Notes under the pieces: model-generated
Databases searched by the model: none
What the model was told of the DNA's origin: nothing
Seen by the model: only the letters and a program-made list of their open reading frames with translations
Shown here: one piece after another, positions 2,393 through 13,636 of the stretch
Position numbering within the stretch: the first letter of the stretch is position 1
How the letters are laid out: the number at the start of each line of letters is the position of its first letter
Program-made: the position numbers and the translations under genes
Sequence record: OP292654.1
Reading direction: 5' to 3' (one strand)
DNA length: 64,000 nt

Positions 2393-2514
2393 GGAATCTT
2401 ACAGCAAAAATTAAACCTTTTGATGAAAACAAAACGACGGGGTTCAATTCCCCACCCACGAACATCTGCCTTATTCAAATAGTGGGAGCTTGGTGCTGGA
2501 TAAAAAGAGATTCC
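2393..2514 (+). ncRNA. CAGCAA-family element with permuted tRNA-like module
   Basis: GGAATCT/AGATTCC terminal stem, ACAGCAA, T-arm GGGG-TTCAATT-CCCC, closed acceptor-like CCCAC/GTGGG. Confidence 0.7.
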
Positions 2515-2582: not shown

Positions 2583-2698
2583 GAAATCTTACAGCAAACA
2601 AAACAATATTTTTTATGCGAAAAAAACGGTGCGGTTCGAATCCGCAGCAGCCATGTTGCTATGTAGGCTGTGCTTGGGGCCAGAAAAACAAAGATTTC
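2583..2698 (+). ncRNA. CAGCAA-family element with anticodon loop GCG and permuted tRNA-like module
   Basis: GAAATCTT/AAGATTTC stem; TTTTT-AT GCG AA-AAAAA; T-arm TGCGG-TTCGAAT-CCGCA; GCAGCC/GGCTGT acceptor-like stem. Confidence 0.75.
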
Positions 2699-2960: not shown

Positions 2961-3066
2961 AAGAATCGTCCAGCAAACATAACTCTTTATATTTCATTTG
3001 GCGAAAAACACCTTCGGTTCGAATCCGATTTACCACTGGCTGTGGGGATAGAAAACAACGATTCTT
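2961..3066 (+). ncRNA. CAGCAA-family element with anticodon loop TTG and T-arm
   Basis: AAGAATCGT/ACGATTCTT stem; TTTC-AT TTG GC-GAAA; TCGG-TTCGAAT-CCGA; CCAC/GTGG. Confidence 0.75.
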
Positions 3067-3094: not shown

Positions 3095-3250
3095 GGATTC
3101 TGACAGCAACACATAAAATCTTAAAATCTATCAAATAATGAGATTGGATACTCGGACGTAAAACTCCCTTCGTGTCCACCTGGTAACTAGGGAGATAATA
3201 ATTAGTTATATTGAGCCGTGCTAGGTAGTTGCTCAATTAATAGAGAATCC
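3095..3250 (+). ncRNA. CAGCAA-family element, long divergent cargo
   Basis: GGATTCT/AGAATCC stem followed by GACAGCAA; about 135-nt interior without a clear T-arm. Confidence 0.5.
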
Positions 3251-3392: not shown

Positions 3393-3514
3393 GAGAAAGT
3401 AGCTCAGTTGGTAGAGCAGGTAGAAACCCAAAATTACAGTACTGTAATTTCGCAGCAACCATACTTCATCCACTTTTAATGGCCTGGTCGTTGGTTCGAG
3501 TCCAACCTTTCTCG
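3393..3514 (+). tRNA. trnK: tRNA-Lys(TTT) interrupted by a 49-nt insertion (3421-3469)
   Basis: removing 3421-3469 gives a perfect cloverleaf: GAGAAAG/CTTTCTC, GGCCA-CT TTT AA-TGGCC, GTTGG-TTCGAGT-CCAAC. Confidence 0.85.
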
Positions 3515-3516
3515 CA

Positions 3517-3577
3517 TAGAATCTAACAGCAAACATATTCTTATTCAATTGGTGAAAACAAAGATTATAGATTCTAG
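3517..3577 (+). ncRNA. CAGCAA-family minimal element (loop AA TTG GT)
   Basis: TAGAATCTA/TAGATTCTA stem, ACAGCAA, TTC-AATTGGT-GAAAAC. Confidence 0.7.
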
Positions 3578-3962: not shown

Positions 3963-3969
3963 AAGAATT

Positions 3970-4028
3970 TGGAATCCTCCAGCAACCACACAAAAACTCA
4001 AACTTTTACTTTGACTATGTGGATTCCA
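3970..4028 (+). ncRNA. CAGCAA-family minimal element with Lys(TTT)-type anticodon stem-loop
   Basis: TGGAATCC/GGATTCCA stem, CCAGCAA, TCAAA-CT TTT AC-TTTGA. Confidence 0.75.
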
Positions 4029-4045
4029 GTATTAATTGAGAGATA

Positions 4046-5070: not shown

Positions 5071-5154
5071 CTAAGTAGTACTGTGAAATTATCCAACACA
5101 ATAGGTAGCACTTTGGATGAATCAGTAAGCCTATATCGTACTACAAATAAATTA

Positions 5155-5290
5155 AAGAATTCAACAGCAACTAAATGTTAACCCAAATAGCGGCCTTATG
5201 GCGTGTAGGTTCGAGTCCTACGATCTATGTCAGTACGAATAGTGATGGTGAAATAGGTAGACACGGCTATCCAATAAACGATGAATTCTT
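5155..5290 (+). ncRNA. CAGCAA-family element with circularly permuted class II (Leu-like) tRNA body
   Basis: AAGAATTCA/TGAATTCTT stem; 3' half (ATAGC, variable hairpin GCC-TTAT-GGC, GTAGG-TTCGAGT-CCTAC) precedes 5' half (GGTGAAATAGGTAGACAC D-arm, GCTAT). Confidence 0.75.
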
Positions 5291-5578: not shown

Positions 5579-5719
5579 ATGTCAGGCAACGCACATAGCT
5601 CTAAACGTAACGACCATAGTTATGAAACGCTGAATCGCAATAATCCGCATCATTCGCGTCGTAATGACCATAGTTACGAAACCCTGAATCGTAATAACCC
5701 GCATCAACCTAAACGTTAA
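5579..5719 (+). CDS. 46-aa micropeptide with duplicated RNDHSYETLNRNNPH motif
   Basis: AAAGGTG RBS; 54-bp-period direct repeat differing mainly at synonymous positions. Confidence 0.65.
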   Translation: MSGNAHSSKRNDHSYETLNRNNPHHSRRNDHSYETLNRNNPHQPKR

Positions 5720-5736
5720 TGCGTTAGTAACAAATT

Positions 5737-5851
5737 TGGAATTTAACAGCAATCACTTTCTATCACGCAGCATGTCGCAGGTTCGAGTCCTGTCAGTACT
5801 AGTACTGTAGCTCAGTTGGGAGAGCAGCCGCCTAAAACGAAATAAATTCCA
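5737..5851 (+). ncRNA. CAGCAA-family element with circularly permuted tRNA-Asp-like body (anticodon ATC)
   Basis: TGGAATTTA/TAAATTCCA stem; CT ATC AC-GCAGC-ATGTC-GCAGG-TTCGAGT-CCTGT-CAGTACT then AGTACTG-TA-GCTC AGTTGGGA GAGC-A-GCCGC. Confidence 0.8.
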
Positions 5852-5974
5852 GTCTTAATCAAATTCACCAGGCGTACTATGGTGTGATACGGATAGCATG
5901 TTATCCTATAAGGTCAGAATAGAATACGTATTAGTCTCTTGAAAAGACTTCTGTAAACTCAATTTGTACTCATT

Positions 5975-6029
5975 TAGAATCTACCAGCAATTAAAACTTC
6001 TCGGATATAGAAAACAAAAATAGATTCTA
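5975..6029 (+). ncRNA. CAGCAA-family minimal element (loop CG GAT AT)
   Basis: TAGAATCTA/TAGATTCTA stem, CCAGCAA, TTCT-CGGATAT-AGAA AAC. Confidence 0.7.
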
Positions 6030-6053
6030 GCTTTAATTGAATAAAACCGGATT

Positions 6054-6115
6054 TGGAATCCAGCAGCAACCATAAATGAACTCAACTGTTAATTGAAAAC
6101 TCAAAATGGATTCCA
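6054..6115 (+). ncRNA. CAGCAA-family minimal element with Asn(GTT)-type anticodon stem-loop
   Basis: TGGAATCCA/TGGATTCCA stem, GCAGCAA, TCAA-CT GTT AA-TTGA AAAC. Confidence 0.8.
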
Positions 6116-6132
6116 GTATTTTTAAGTGAAAT

Positions 6133-6810: not shown

Positions 6811-6856
6811 AAGAATCTTCCAGCAATTAAAACGGTTGAATAATATATAGATTCTT
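6811..6856 (+). ncRNA. CAGCAA-family minimal element
   Basis: AAGAATCT/AGATTCTT stem, CCAGCAA; short interior with only a weak hairpin. Confidence 0.6.
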
Positions 6857-7608: not shown

Positions 7609-7614
7609 CAAATT

Positions 7615-7678
7615 TAGAATCTAACAGCAAACACTATTTTATTTCACTTATCTTGAAAACCGAAAATAATAGATTCTA
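7615..7678 (+). ncRNA. CAGCAA-family minimal element with anticodon-like loop TAT
   Basis: TAGAATCTA/TAGATTCTA stem, ACAGCAA, TTCA-CT TAT CT-TGAA AAC. Confidence 0.75.
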
Positions 7679-7693
7679 GTCTTTATTCTCAAA

Positions 7694-13277: not shown

Positions 13278-13351
13278 ATAGTAGTAAGTCAATTGGTAAC
13301 GACTCCCTATTAAGATTAGGAGAATGTGTGGTTCAAATCCCTCCTACTATT
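13278..13351 (+). pseudogene. degenerate tRNA-like gene, anticodon AAG
   Basis: ATAGTAG/CTACTAT acceptor, AGTC/GACT D-arm, CCTA-TT AAG AT-TAGG; T-stem largely mispaired. Confidence 0.6.
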
Positions 13352-13360
13352 AAGTACTAT

Positions 13361-13433
13361 GCCTCGTTAGCTCAGTTGGTAGAGCATCCGACTTTTAATC
13401 GGAGTGTCACTGGTTCAAGCCCAGTACGGGGTA
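13361..13433 (+). tRNA. trnK: tRNA-Lys(TTT)
   Basis: cloverleaf, TCCGA-CT TTT AA-TCGGA. Confidence 0.95.
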
Positions 13434-13450
13434 CTAACTTTGAGGTACAT

Positions 13451-13636
13451 ATGAAAAGCACAGAAGAACAATTTCTGAATTTATTATCCAAAGACATTGA
13501 TGAACATCCAGAGAACTTAGTACCAGTAAGTACTGAAATGTGGAATAGCATTAAAGAACTAACTGCTGGTGTTGAAGTTGATTTGGATTCACCTATAGAG
13601 GACGATGAAGATGAAACCGGAACAATGGATCATTGA
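13451..13636 (+). CDS. PrlF antitoxin C-terminal-domain-like peptide
   Basis: FLNLLSKDIDEHPENL...ELTAGVEVDLDSPIEDDE resembles the E. coli PrlF C-terminus (FLRFLDADIQNNPQ...KLVAGMDVNIDDEIGDDE, from memory); GAGG RBS. Confidence 0.65.
   Translation: MKSTEEQFLNLLSKDIDEHPENLVPVSTEMWNSIKELTAGVEVDLDSPIEDDEDETGTMDH

What the first reader, a model, noticed from the sequence alone, without database searches (positions are those of the whole stretch)
5155..5290. Second permuted tRNA body, class II (Leu-like), in the same scaffold
Seen: ATAGC + variable-arm hairpin GCC-TTAT-GGC + T-arm GTAGG-TTCGAGT-CCTAC precede a Leu-type D-arm (GGTGAAATAGGTAGACAC) and GCTAT, which pairs perfectly with ATAGC. The acceptor is only partly paired (ATAG/CTAT), and CCAA occurs on both sides of the break, so the anticodon is ambiguous. 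The break differs from the Lys copy (28/29) and lies at the loop edge as in the Asp-like copy. Inference: the scaffold has captured unrelated tRNAs independently, suggesting a recurrent insertion or capture mechanism rather than one ancestral duplication.
Basis: partly seen in the sequence, partly recalled or inferred. Interest (0 to 1): 0.75.

Follow-up and report, generated by a model that had tools for sequence, protein, structure and literature searches.

The report
Phage Y-RNA-like leucine-tRNA mimic
The 136-base stretch is a real, conserved small RNA gene of a jumbo phage: a leucine-tRNA look-alike with a sealed acceptor end, plugged by its anticodon stem into a conserved closing stem, and probably the RNA partner of a phage Ro60-like protein.

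Summary
Observation confirmed. Window 5155-5290 (+) holds, in permuted order, every arm of a class II tRNA-Leu: anticodon-stem 3' strand, variable hairpin, T-arm, capped acceptor stem, D-arm, anticodon-stem 5' strand. A 9-bp closing stem and an invariant ACAGCAA enclose it. There is no anticodon loop.

It is not debris. Orthologues occur in all 18 related Mimasvirus/Eneladusvirus records. On 38 diverse members 93% of cells pair, against 66% when shuffled. A covariance model built only from unrelated metagenomic members finds it at 86.5 bits (E 6.5e-16).

It is one of 12 ACAGCAA-closed units in the window's tRNA island. Their cargo is class II, class I (partial Rfam YrlA match), reduced tRNA-like, or plain hairpins.

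In other phages (FelixO1, Listeria LMSP-25, Campylobacter PC5, Mycobacterium Krypton555, 11 of 12 metagenomic loci) arrays of such units abut, on the same strand, a DUF2828 gene. A homologue's model has the Ro60 ring plus vWA fold. XbC2 encodes this protein (XbC2_180) beside an RNA ligase, about 204 kb away.

Best reading: a YrlA-type Y-RNA analogue, a new variant of a known kind. "Independent capture" is only partly supported: both cargo classes are ancient and both are opened at the same place.

The parts
5155..5163 (+). Closing stem, 5' strand (AAGAATTCA)
   Evidence: Pairs with 5282-5290. Compensatory changes: GAATTCA/TGAATTC becomes GAATCTA/TAGATTC in GAP32. Closing-stem sequences are completely different in unrelated members. 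67 of 101 pattern matches have a 7-bp stem, against 8.5 in cross-paired controls.
5164..5170 (+). ACAGCAA motif; CAGCAA was the search anchor and its flanks are conserved. Proposed protein-binding site.
   Evidence: In 47 units from phages of four host phyla the motif follows the 5' strand after 2-3 nt, and the sequence after it is A/C-rich and G-poor. Present in all members of alignments A4 and A5.
5171..5186 (+). 5' linker of the internal loop
   Evidence: Variable in sequence and length among orthologues.
5187..5191 (+). Anticodon-stem 3' strand (tRNA positions 39-43, ATAGC)
   Evidence: Pairs with 5266-5270. ATAGC/GCTAT becomes ACAGC/GCTGT in BF and Yen9-04. This helix is 90.8% paired, with all 5 pairs showing double changes.
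5192..5204 (+). Variable arm (G, GCC-TTAT-GGC, GU), class II type
   Evidence: GCC/GGC becomes ACC/GGT in BF. The helix is 82% paired, with 3 of 3 pairs showing double changes. The layout matches real phage tRNA-Leu.
5205..5221 (+). T-arm (GTAGG-TTCGAGT-CCTAC)
   Evidence: 98.9% paired; 3 of 5 pairs show double changes. The T-loop consensus lies outside any annotated tRNA.
5222..5245 (+). Acceptor-like stem: 3' strand 5222-5228, capping loop 5229-5238, 5' strand 5239-5245
   Evidence: Only 4 Watson-Crick pairs in XbC2, plus U.U, A.G and G.A. There are 5 pairs in Kaldavass and GAP32, and 6-7 pairs with a UUCG cap in BF and Yen9-04. Most distant members have 7 of 7 pairs with unrelated sequences. 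The helix is 91.7% paired, with 7 of 7 pairs showing double changes.
5246..5265 (+). U8 G9, then a 3-bp D-stem with an 11-nt D-loop (Leu type), then G26
   Evidence: GUG/CAC alternates with GCG/CGC across the family (19 against 19); 100% paired.
5266..5270 (+). Anticodon-stem 5' strand (positions 27-31, GCTAT)
   Evidence: See 5187-5191.
5271..5281 (+). A-rich 3' linker of the internal loop; occupies the place of an anticodon loop
   Evidence: The 8 nt before the 3' strand are 55% A across 47 units. No U33-type 7-nt loop can be formed.
5282..5290 (+). Closing stem, 3' strand (TGAATTCTT), followed by GTATTAAT
5736..5852 (+).
   Evidence: Rfam YrlA RF02553 at 41.9 bits, E 1.6e-7, covering model positions 24-84 only, below the gathering score of 69. 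Model R1 scores it 41.8 bits.
2393..2514 (+). Paralogous unit with reduced tRNA-like cargo (T-arm, capped acceptor, mini D hairpin), preceded by a TG-extended -10 promoter-like site
   Evidence: 26.9 bits.
2583..2698 (+). Paralogous unit with reduced tRNA-like cargo, preceded by a promoter-like site (11 of 12 matches)
   Evidence: 28 bits.
2961..3066 (+). Paralogous unit with reduced tRNA-like cargo
   Evidence: 24.7 bits.
3095..3250 (+). Paralogous unit with a larger non-tRNA cargo
3517..3576 (+). Paralogous unit with small cargo
3969..4029 (+). Paralogous unit with small cargo
5974..6030 (+). Paralogous unit with small cargo
6053..6116 (+). Paralogous unit with small cargo
6811..6856 (+). 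Paralogous unit with small cargo, just upstream of tRNA-Gln
7614..7679 (+). Paralogous unit with small cargo

Best explanation
The element is a non-coding RNA gene of the Y-RNA-like (YrlA-like) kind.

Anatomy. A 9-bp stem formed by the two ends of the RNA, together with the adjacent single-stranded ACAGCAA and the A-rich opposite strand, forms a conserved scaffold. A tRNA-Leu-shaped module is plugged into this scaffold through its anticodon stem. The module has a T-arm, D-arm, long variable arm and an acceptor stem sealed by a loop. It has no anticodon and cannot decode.

Shown: the RNA architecture, its conservation and covariation, its membership in a large phage RNA family, and the tight genomic linkage of that family to genes for DUF2828 proteins. 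A model of a homologue of these proteins has the Ro60 fold (HEAT-repeat ring plus vWA).

Inferred: the scaffold is the binding site of the phage's own Ro60-like protein (XbC2_180, which lies next to an RNA ligase and near a CCA-adding enzyme). The tRNA-Leu mimic would then be the effector module. It could tether tRNA-recognising enzymes to the ribonucleoprotein, or compete with real tRNA for them. Candidates are processing or repair enzymes, or host tRNA-directed defence nucleases. The role would be in tRNA surveillance or repair, or in counter-defence, early in infection.
For: Architecture and covariation.

Out-of-sample covariance-model hit: 86.5 bits, E 6.5e-16.

Leu-type cargo: 38 of the 40 nearest phage tRNAs are tRNA-Leu; re-permuted orthologues are called as class II-sized (85-nt) tRNAs.

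Kinship to YrlA: the class I paralogue and its relatives match the tRNA-like core of Rfam YrlA at 34-42 bits.

Protein partner:
- A DUF2828+DUF7788 protein is the commonest neighbour, and in every pairing printed it lies on the same strand.
- 39 of 124 unit-bearing metagenomic loci hold it, against 0 of 25 unit-free loci.
- Starting from the protein instead, 11 of 12 loci have 1-3 units beside the gene, same strand; nine of them within about 0.7 kb.
- The same holds in FelixO1, Mycobacterium phage Krypton555, Listeria LMSP-25 and Campylobacter PC5.
- All 18 isolate records that carry the Leu-type RNA also encode the protein at 67-100% identity.
- XbC2_180 is annotated DUF2828 and sits beside an RNA ligase.

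Ro60 kinship of the protein: PHROG 850 covers both DUF2828 and TROVE proteins. An AlphaFold model of a homologue (47% identical in the alignment) has Ro60/TROVE structures as its top 11 PDB matches, full length, E 1.6e-9 to 6e-7. SEA-PHAGES annotators call the protein 'Ro-like RNA binding protein'.

Precedent: Ro60 orthologues with adjacent tRNA-mimicking Y RNAs (PMC4201824); Thermus phage Ro60 binds two upstream Y-like RNAs that have a 5'-3' stem and a bulge motif (PMC12135203); Felixounavirus Bas63 gp130, a Ro60-like protein, counters the Ppl defence, and its authors guessed that nearby 'tRNAs' are Y RNAs (10.1101/2024.10.10.617714).
Against: - No binding, expression or end-mapping data exist.
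- In XbC2 the units lie about 204 kb from XbC2_180, and no unit lies next to that gene.
- The linkage could partly reflect that both features like tRNA islands, although unit-free tRNA-rich loci lacked the gene.
- The finding has no Rfam YrlA hit at E<=10, and the family lacks YrlA's GNCGAA motif.
- One unit (L153) lies near a protein closer to TROVE than to DUF2828, so the pairing of motif and protein subfamily is not strict.
- XbC2's own acceptor stem is weak, and its folding energy is not better than shuffles.
- The protein fold evidence comes from a homologue, not from XbC2_180 itself.
Confidence: 0.65

Rival explanations
1. A protein-independent tRNA decoy. The capped tRNA-Leu mimic on its own competes with real tRNA for a host tRNA-targeting nuclease, toxin or modification enzyme. 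The scaffold only stabilises the RNA or defines its ends. This reading is not mutually exclusive with the best explanation.
For: The cargo is a close tRNA-Leu shape mimic. It lies in an early-region tRNA island with sigma-70-like promoters. Hughes et al. suggested that YrlA's tRNA-like domain may competitively inhibit an anticodon nuclease (PMC7790460).
Against: Many units carry no tRNA-like cargo yet keep the scaffold. The scaffold motif is conserved across host phyla and is tightly linked to one protein family. The element has no anticodon loop to offer an anticodon nuclease.
Confidence: 0.15
2. A true permuted or split tRNA-Leu gene. RNase P and 3' trimming with CCA addition would open the acceptor loop, giving a two-piece, chargeable tRNA-like molecule, as for permuted algal tRNA genes or two-piece tmRNA.
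For: Many distant members have a perfect 7-bp acceptor stem followed by A73, sometimes ACCA, and then an AT-rich spacer. Type-B relatives keep a full anticodon stem-loop. M. smegmatis YrlA is cut by RNase P and receives CCA in vivo (PMC4201824). The phage encodes a CCA-adding enzyme.
Against: This element and all type-A members lack an anticodon loop, and none can be rebuilt from the flanks. The XbC2 acceptor has 4 pairs and no CCA. The BF and Yen9-04 orthologues cap the acceptor with a UUCG tetraloop. ARAGORN rejects the re-permuted XbC2 copy.
Confidence: 0.07
3. Punctuation of the tRNA operon. The closing stems with U-rich tails would act as terminators or nuclease processing signals, and the tRNA-like insides would be incidental.
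For: Units sit between tRNA genes. The 3' strands are followed by GT and T-rich sequence. Some units are preceded by promoter-like sites.
Against: The cargo arms covary strongly. ACAGCAA lies in a loop and is present in every unit read across phyla. In phages where they lie just upstream of, or just downstream of, the DUF2828 gene, units sit directly next to it. The terminator scan does not pick the units.
Confidence: 0.07
4. Decayed debris of tRNA gene rearrangement (a pseudogene) in a recombination-prone tRNA island.
For: HNH endonuclease genes and indels are frequent in the island. The XbC2 acceptor is degenerate.
Against: The element is conserved in position across two phage genera, has compensatory changes in every helix, and is detected by a model built from unrelated phages.
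Confidence: 0.02

Closest known systems
YrlA, the bacterial and phage Y RNA-like RNAs (Rfam RF02553; Chen et al. 2014, PMC4201824)
   Same: The order of arms is the same: variable region, T-arm, acceptor-like stem-loop, D-arm. The anticodon-stem position opens onto a long stem made by the RNA's ends. A short conserved single-stranded motif lies near the 5' end. The genes are linked to a Ro60-fold protein gene on the same strand. The class I paralogues match the YrlA core.
   Different: The tRNA-like module here is class II tRNA-Leu type (3-bp D-stem, Leu D-loop, Leu-style variable hairpin). The motif is ACAGCAA, not GNCGAAN0-1G. No match reaches the Rfam gathering score. The linked protein is of the DUF2828 branch rather than Pfam TROVE. 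The units form arrays with interchangeable cargo. In XbC2 they lie in the tRNA island, far from the protein gene.
Thermus phage phiLo Ro60 with Yrl1 and Yrl2 (PMC12135203; PDB 9KOP, 9L5Y)
   Same: A phage-encoded Ro60-fold protein with two Y-like RNAs encoded just upstream. Each RNA has a 5'-3' stem flanking an internal bulge with a short motif. The phiLo structures are among the best fold matches of the DUF2828 model.
   Different: The phiLo RNAs use a CGAA motif and are not reported there as tRNA mimics. Binding and a complex with host PNPase were shown experimentally there; nothing has been shown here.
Bas63 gp130 (Felixounavirus), a Ro60-like counter of the Ppl defence (preprint 10.1101/2024.10.10.617714)
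   Same: By that paper's description, gp130 lies directly upstream of the tRNA genes, as the DUF2828 gene of the related FelixO1 does; whether the two are orthologues was not tested here. FelixO1 carries four ACAGCAA units there. The authors proposed that unidentified Y RNAs lie among the 'tRNAs'.
   Different: No RNA partner was identified in that work. The link between Ppl counter-defence and the RNAs is untested.
Circularly permuted tRNA genes of Cyanidioschyzon merolae (from my own knowledge: Soma et al. 2007)
   Same: The 3' half of the tRNA is encoded upstream of the 5' half, and the acceptor strands are joined by an intervening sequence.
   Different: Those genes mature, through a circular intermediate, into ordinary decoding tRNAs with an anticodon loop. 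Here no anticodon loop exists, and the ends form a conserved scaffold.
Two-piece tmRNA from permuted ssrA genes (from my own knowledge: Keiler et al. 2000)
   Same: A permuted tRNA-like domain whose anticodon-arm position is replaced by a long helix. Some family members carry ACCA plus a spacer, like the permuted ssrA layout.
   Different: There is no tag reading frame and there are no pseudoknots. The body is Leu-type, not Ala-type. ARAGORN finds no tmRNA here.

Membership tests
YrlA / Y RNA-like (Rfam RF02553) | tRNA-like domain with T stem-loop, acceptor-like stem-loop and D stem-loop in that order, with a V region upstream of T | tested here: met
   Sequence; covariation in all five helices.
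YrlA / Y RNA-like (Rfam RF02553) | Reaches the curated Rfam gathering score (69 bits) | tested here: not met
   The finding has no YrlA hit at E<=10. The class I neighbour scores 41.9 bits over model positions 24-84 only. Relatives score 32-38 bits.
YrlA / Y RNA-like (Rfam RF02553) | GNCGAAN0-1G motif near the 5' end (the presumed Ro60 contact; PMC4201824) | tested here: not met
   The 5' region reads AAGAATTCA-ACAGCAAC. ACAGCAA takes that place in the 47 units examined.
YrlA / Y RNA-like (Rfam RF02553) | Encoded within about 4 kb of a Ro60 orthologue, on the same strand | tested here: not met
   In XbC2 all annotated CDS within 4 kb of the element are 167 aa or shorter. tblastn with a TROVE protein lists no Erwinia, Yersinia or Serratia phages among its commonest hits and finds nothing in the window. 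The Ro60-like gene XbC2_180 is about 204 kb away. For other family members the criterion is met with the DUF2828-type protein.
YrlA / Y RNA-like (Rfam RF02553) | Long stem formed by the 5' and 3' ends, flanking a large internal loop | tested here: met
   A 9-bp closing stem with compensatory changes.
YrlA / Y RNA-like (Rfam RF02553) | Physically bound by a Ro60-family protein | not testable with these tools
   Needs RIP/CLIP or EMSA.
Canonical class II tRNA-Leu | 3-bp D-stem with a Leu-type D-loop, a long variable arm, a T-arm, and a 7-bp acceptor stem | tested here: inconclusive
   The D, V and T arms are met, and the nearest tRNAs are tRNA-Leu. The acceptor has only 4 Watson-Crick pairs in XbC2. 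The re-permuted copy is rejected by ARAGORN, while 5 of 6 orthologues pass.
Canonical class II tRNA-Leu | 7-nt anticodon loop with an anticodon; free 5' end and a 3' CCA end | tested here: not met
   The anticodon stem runs into the scaffold. The acceptor is closed by a loop, and no CCA is present.
Permuted tRNA genes (algal type) | The 3' half lies upstream of the 5' half | tested here: met
Permuted tRNA genes (algal type) | Joining the transcript's ends rebuilds a normal anticodon or other loop and yields a decoding tRNA | tested here: not met
   The flanks are conserved scaffold. No U33-type loop can be assembled in this or the other type-A members.
Two-piece (permuted) tmRNA | Tag-peptide reading frame and pseudoknots; Ala-type acceptor | tested here: not met
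   ARAGORN and Rfam find no tmRNA in the window. The unit is 136 nt and fully accounted for by tRNA arms and scaffold.
ACAGCAA-closed unit family (defined here) | 7-9 bp closing stem, 2-3 nt, CAGCAA, cargo, A-rich strand, 3' strand | tested here: met
   CM R1 full-length hit.

The most novel reading that the evidence does not exclude
The ACAGCAA-closed units are the so far unidentified RNA partners of the DUF2828 / Ro60-like 'RNA-binding proteins' found in at least 700 sequenced phage records. These include FelixO1-like, P100-like, Campylobacter, Vibrio and Aeromonas phages, mycobacteriophages and jumbo Mimasvirus/Eneladusvirus phages. Together they would form a modular ribonucleoprotein. Its interchangeable cargo (class II tRNA-Leu mimic, class I mimic, mini tRNA-like domain, plain hairpins) would aim the particle at different host tRNA-directed defences or host enzymes. 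Members with A73-CCA plus a spacer would be matured into two-piece, possibly chargeable, tRNA-like RNAs.
Probability: 0.35. Interest if true: 0.85.

Novelty: new variant of a known kind. Interest (0 to 1): 0.7.

Why it matters
Ro60-like genes are common in phages, and one (Bas63 gp130) was recently shown to counter a bacterial defence system. Its RNA partners were only guessed at.

This finding gives a concrete, searchable RNA signature: a closing stem plus ACAGCAA. It also gives a catalogue of cargo types, including the first class II (tRNA-Leu) mimic seen in this kind of RNA. That makes the question directly testable by RIP-seq, gel shifts and deletions in model phages such as FelixO1 or Bas63.

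It also explains unannotated 'intergenic' stretches and odd tRNA calls in the tRNA islands of jumbo phages, and it warns annotators that these are not broken tRNA genes.

Tried and rejected
- Rfam at gathering score found only tRNAs. At E<=10 there was nothing on the finding itself.
- A TROVE/Ro60 gene near the element: none. The neighbours are short ORFs. tblastn with a verified phage TROVE protein lists no Erwinia, Yersinia or Serratia phages among its commonest hits and finds nothing in the window.
- Rebuilding an anticodon loop from the flanks, including the duplicated CCAA: no U33-type loop in any orthologue, so rejected.
- A kink-turn reading of the internal loop: the tandem G.A positions do not fit, so rejected by inspection.
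- ARAGORN on the re-permuted XbC2 copy gave no call even at 80% thresholds.
- The folding-energy z-score of the XbC2 sequence is not significant.
- blastn of a class I unit from a ~175-kb metagenomic contig against isolate phages: no match.
A single protein was used instead.
I did not resend them and modelled a metagenomic homologue instead.
- Sequence-only PDB search with the DUF2828 profile gave only weak Ro60/TROVE hits (E 0.13-0.46). The fold search was needed.
- Burroughs & Aravind 2016 and Sim et al. 2020 are not held, so their treatment of DUF2828 and phage Y RNAs could not be checked.
- A strict rule 'ACAGCAA goes with DUF2828, CGAA goes with TROVE' is not claimed, because L153 is a counter-example.
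Full report
Where we are. The window is the last 64 kb of Xanthomonas phage XbC2 (OP292654.1, positions 303902-367901), a 368-kb Mimasvirus related to GAP32 and CBB. Its first 20 kb form a tRNA island with 21 ARAGORN calls and 24 Rfam calls. The finding lies between tRNA-Ile and a small ORF. It is unannotated in GenBank and in all relatives.

Observation.
- Anticodon-stem 3' strand ATAGC: 5187-5191.
- Variable hairpin GCC-TTAT-GGC: 5193-5202.
- T-arm: 5205-5221.
- Acceptor 3' strand 5222-5228, a 10-nt cap 5229-5238, and acceptor 5' strand 5239-5245.
- U8 G9, a 3-bp D-stem with an 11-nt Leu-type D-loop, and G26: 5246-5265.
- Anticodon-stem 5' strand GCTAT: 5266-5270.

It consists of a 9-bp closing stem (5155-5163 with 5282-5290), an ACAGCAA directly after its 5' strand (5164-5170), and an A-rich strand before its 3' strand. 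There is no anticodon loop. The anticodon stem opens into an internal loop of the scaffold.

Is it real? Orthologues exist in all 18 related records: XbC2, Kaldavass, GAP32, CBB, BF, six pEa_SNUABM phages, fHe-Yen9-03 and fHe-Yen9-04. In the loci I read it lies downstream of tRNA-Ile. The orthologues carry compensatory changes:
- ATAGC/GCTAT becomes ACAGC/GCTGT.
- GCC/GGC becomes ACC/GGT.
- CTAT/ATAG becomes TTAT/ATAA.
- The closing stem GAATTCA/TGAATTC becomes GAATCTA/TAGATTC.

A pattern scan of IMG/VR (CAGCAA, then a T-loop, then a Leu-type D-arm start) plus a simple closing-stem filter gave 65 distinct elements. They come from many unrelated viral contigs of 4.7 to 425 kb, with completely different stem sequences. 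Of 101 pattern matches taken without any stem filter, 67 have a 7-bp closing stem, against 8.5 in cross-paired controls. The acceptor stem was located only by the flanking T- and D-arm motifs. It is 7 of 7 paired in most members, with unrelated sequences.

On a structure-blind MAFFT alignment of 38 members, 93.2% of cells pair. The shuffled control gives 65.9% and slid partners give 36-45%. The covariation score is 0.716 against 0.206, and 19 of 23 pairs show double-sided changes. A covariance model built only from 29 metagenomic members, with no Mimasvirus or Eneladusvirus sequence, finds window 5153-5289 over its full length at 86.5 bits, E 6.5e-16. It finds the orthologues at 88-100 bits.

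Leu-likeness and the re-permutation test. I compared the core (positions 8-31 plus 39-65) with 969 distinct phage tRNAs called in the fetched loci. The 40 best matches include 38 tRNA-Leu, at up to 80% identity. The re-permuted sequence was acceptor 5' strand, D-arm, anticodon stem with a 7-nt loop, V, T, acceptor 3' strand, then ACCA. ARAGORN calls it as an 85-nt tRNA for 5 of 6 phages, at scores of 110-118. The window's genuine tRNAs score 109-125. The isotype it prints follows the loop I inserted, so the call shows tRNA shape, not Leu identity. XbC2's own copy fails even at 80% thresholds. It differs from Kaldavass by one base that breaks a fifth acceptor pair. Shuffles gave 13 calls in 1800 at the relaxed threshold. 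The folding energy of the single XbC2 sequence is no better than shuffles (z = -0.66). The case therefore rests on comparative evidence, not thermodynamics.

The scaffold is a family. The window holds 12 units closed by a 7-9 bp stem of the type rGAATCyw followed by (A/C)CAGCAA. They lie at 2393-2514, 2583-2698, 2961-3066, 3095-3250, 3517-3576, 3969-4029, 5155-5290, 5736-5852, 5974-6030, 6053-6116, 6811-6856 and 7614-7679. Their cargo differs:
- the class II body (this finding);
- a class I body at 5736-5852, which matches only the tRNA-like core (model positions 24-84) of Rfam YrlA at 41.9 bits, below the gathering score of 69;
- three reduced tRNA-like bodies;
- a larger non-tRNA insert;
- six short inserts.

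Two units are preceded by strong sigma-70-like sites with a TG-extended -10. This is the promoter type described for the early region of CBB (PMC5259590).

The likely protein partner. I clustered the ORFs around the 63 metagenomic loci. The commonest neighbour (14 loci) was a 470-570 aa protein with Pfam DUF2828 and DUF7788. In every pairing that printed before the script stopped it lay on the same strand, 0.1-6 kb away. By tblastn, 39 of 124 unit-bearing loci hold it, against 0 of 25 unit-free loci, 18 of which are tRNA-rich. Going the other way, I started from one such protein. Of 12 IMG/VR loci found, 11 carry 1-3 ACAGCAA units on the same strand beside the gene. In nine of them the units lie within about 0.7 kb of the gene; in the other two they touch its start.

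Isolates agree.
- FelixO1 has four units within 1.2 kb downstream of its DUF2828 gene, inside the tRNA cluster.
- Mycobacterium phage Krypton555 has three units just downstream of its 'Ro-like RNA binding protein'. The middle one hits the YrlA core.
- Listeria phage LMSP-25 has three units just upstream, with an RtcB ligase gene 1.3 kb further on.
- Campylobacter phage PC5 has two units just upstream.

All 18 isolate records that carry the Leu-type RNA also encode the protein at 67-100% identity, and about 700 phage records have a homologue. In XbC2 the protein is XbC2_180 (record 104031-105545). It sits beside an RNA ligase (XbC2_178) and near a CCA-adding enzyme and a Nudix hydrolase. No unit lies next to it.

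The protein family is Ro60-like, on three grounds. PHROG 850 covers both DUF2828 proteins (E 1e-136 to 1e-183) and a verified TROVE protein (E 5e-36). An AlphaFold model of a homologue (47% identical to XbC2_180 in the alignment; pLDDT 78, pTM 0.78) has Ro60/TROVE structures as its top 11 PDB matches. These matches are full length, with E 1.6e-9 to 6e-7 and TM 0.5-0.6. SEA-PHAGES annotators already call the protein 'Ro-like'.

Comparison with what is known. Bacterial and phage Ro60 orthologues are encoded next to Y RNAs whose effector module mimics tRNA. In YrlA the order is V, T, acceptor-like stem-loop, D. A GNCGAAN0-1G motif lies near the 5' end, and the genes lie within 4 kb of Ro60 on the same strand (PMC4201824). 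A Thermus phage Ro60 binds two upstream Y-like RNAs that have a 5'-3' stem and a CGAA bulge, and it recruits host PNPase (PMC12135203). The Felixounavirus Bas63 Ro60-like gp130 counters the Ppl defence. Its authors suspected, without identifying any, that some downstream 'tRNAs' are Y RNAs.

The present element works like a YrlA but fails three membership criteria: the Rfam score, the GNCGAA motif, and adjacency to the Ro60 gene in this genome. It also differs in having a class II Leu-type body. I therefore file it as a new variant, not as a YrlA member.

It is not a permuted tRNA gene of the algal type, because no decoding tRNA can be produced from it. It is not a two-piece tmRNA, because it has no tag reading frame.

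Mechanism, with shown and inferred steps marked.
- Shown: the architecture, the conservation, family membership, genomic linkage to the Ro60-like gene family, and the RNA-repair neighbourhood of that gene.
- Inferred: the closing stem plus ACAGCAA binds XbC2_180. The tRNA-Leu mimic acts as tether, gate or competitor for proteins that recognise tRNA shape, in tRNA repair, tRNA surveillance or counter-defence.
- Variation: distant members with a perfect acceptor stem followed by A73 or ACCA and a spacer may be opened by RNase P and receive CCA, as M. smegmatis YrlA does. The XbC2 copy (4-bp acceptor) and the BF and Yen9-04 copies (UUCG cap) probably stay closed.

The cargo classes really are unrelated: Leu-type class II against generic class I. 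The 'Lys' label is not supported. Both copies, however, are opened at the same place. The neighbour has a 5-bp anticodon stem with a conserved central C.A mismatch and compensatory changes. Both cargo types occur in this scaffold in very distant phages. So there is no sign of recent, repeated capture in this lineage. Ancient modular exchange remains possible.

Caveats.
- There is no experimental evidence for expression or binding.
- The co-occurrence statistics come from sampled loci, not a full census.
- The unit detector used for counts is a simple script with a measurable background (61 hits in shuffled sequence against 575 observed).
- The fold evidence is from a homologue.
- Two key reviews could not be read, so a prior description of this scaffold elsewhere cannot be excluded.

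Noticed in passing
window 3393-3514: The annotated 122-nt 'tRNA-Lys(TTT)' carries a ~48-nt insert between the D-arm and the anticodon arm. The insert holds a hairpin followed by GCAGCAACC, a scaffold-like motif inside an otherwise normally ordered tRNA. The same layout occurs in relatives (for example L020 near 956, L012, L103).
   Followed up: partly
window 5072-5150: A conserved element closed by AGTAGTAC/GTACTAC lies between tRNA-Ile and the finding. It is present in GAP32, BF and Yen9-04 and cleanly deleted in Kaldavass. It has no ACAGCAA and no Rfam hit.
   Followed up: no
window 5851-5972: A ~110-nt block is 86-90% identical in Yen9-04, GAP32 and CBB, higher than the flanking sequence. 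It has three predicted hairpins and 3 compensatory pairs in 4 sequences. It may be another small RNA. No Rfam hit.
   Followed up: partly
window 5579-5719: An unannotated 46-codon ORF with a Shine-Dalgarno-like site encodes a peptide that repeats an RNDHSYETLNRNNPH-like block twice. The stretch is absent from Kaldavass.
   Followed up: no
window 13278-13636: The GenBank CDS 'type II toxin-antitoxin system' (13328-13636) overlaps two tRNA calls (13278-13351 and 13361-13434). This looks like over-annotation.
   Followed up: no
L047, L058, L073, L088, L090, L108, L148, L156 (IMG/VR): A second topology ('type B') of the same family keeps a complete anticodon stem-loop (loops CTGATAA, CTTAAAA, CTGAAAA). 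It is opened instead between the anticodon arm and the variable region.
   Followed up: partly
L050, L076, L121, L127, L149 and others (IMG/VR): In many members the acceptor 3' strand is followed by A, often ACCA or ACA, and then an AT-rich spacer before the 5' strand. This resembles an encoded discriminator and CCA plus an intervening sequence.
   Followed up: partly
L153:7800-7935 (- strand): An ACAGCAA unit with class I cargo lies beside a phage tmRNA gene. It is ~1.2 kb from a protein 24% identical to a TROVE protein and not picked up by the DUF2828 queries. The scaffold is therefore not exclusive to the DUF2828 branch.
   Followed up: partly
L157 (XbC2 record 96000-112000): The DUF2828 gene XbC2_180 sits in a cluster with an RNA ligase, a CCA-adding enzyme/phosphodiesterase, a Nudix hydrolase and a ribosome hibernation-factor-like gene. 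This looks like a translation and RNA-repair neighbourhood.
   Followed up: partly
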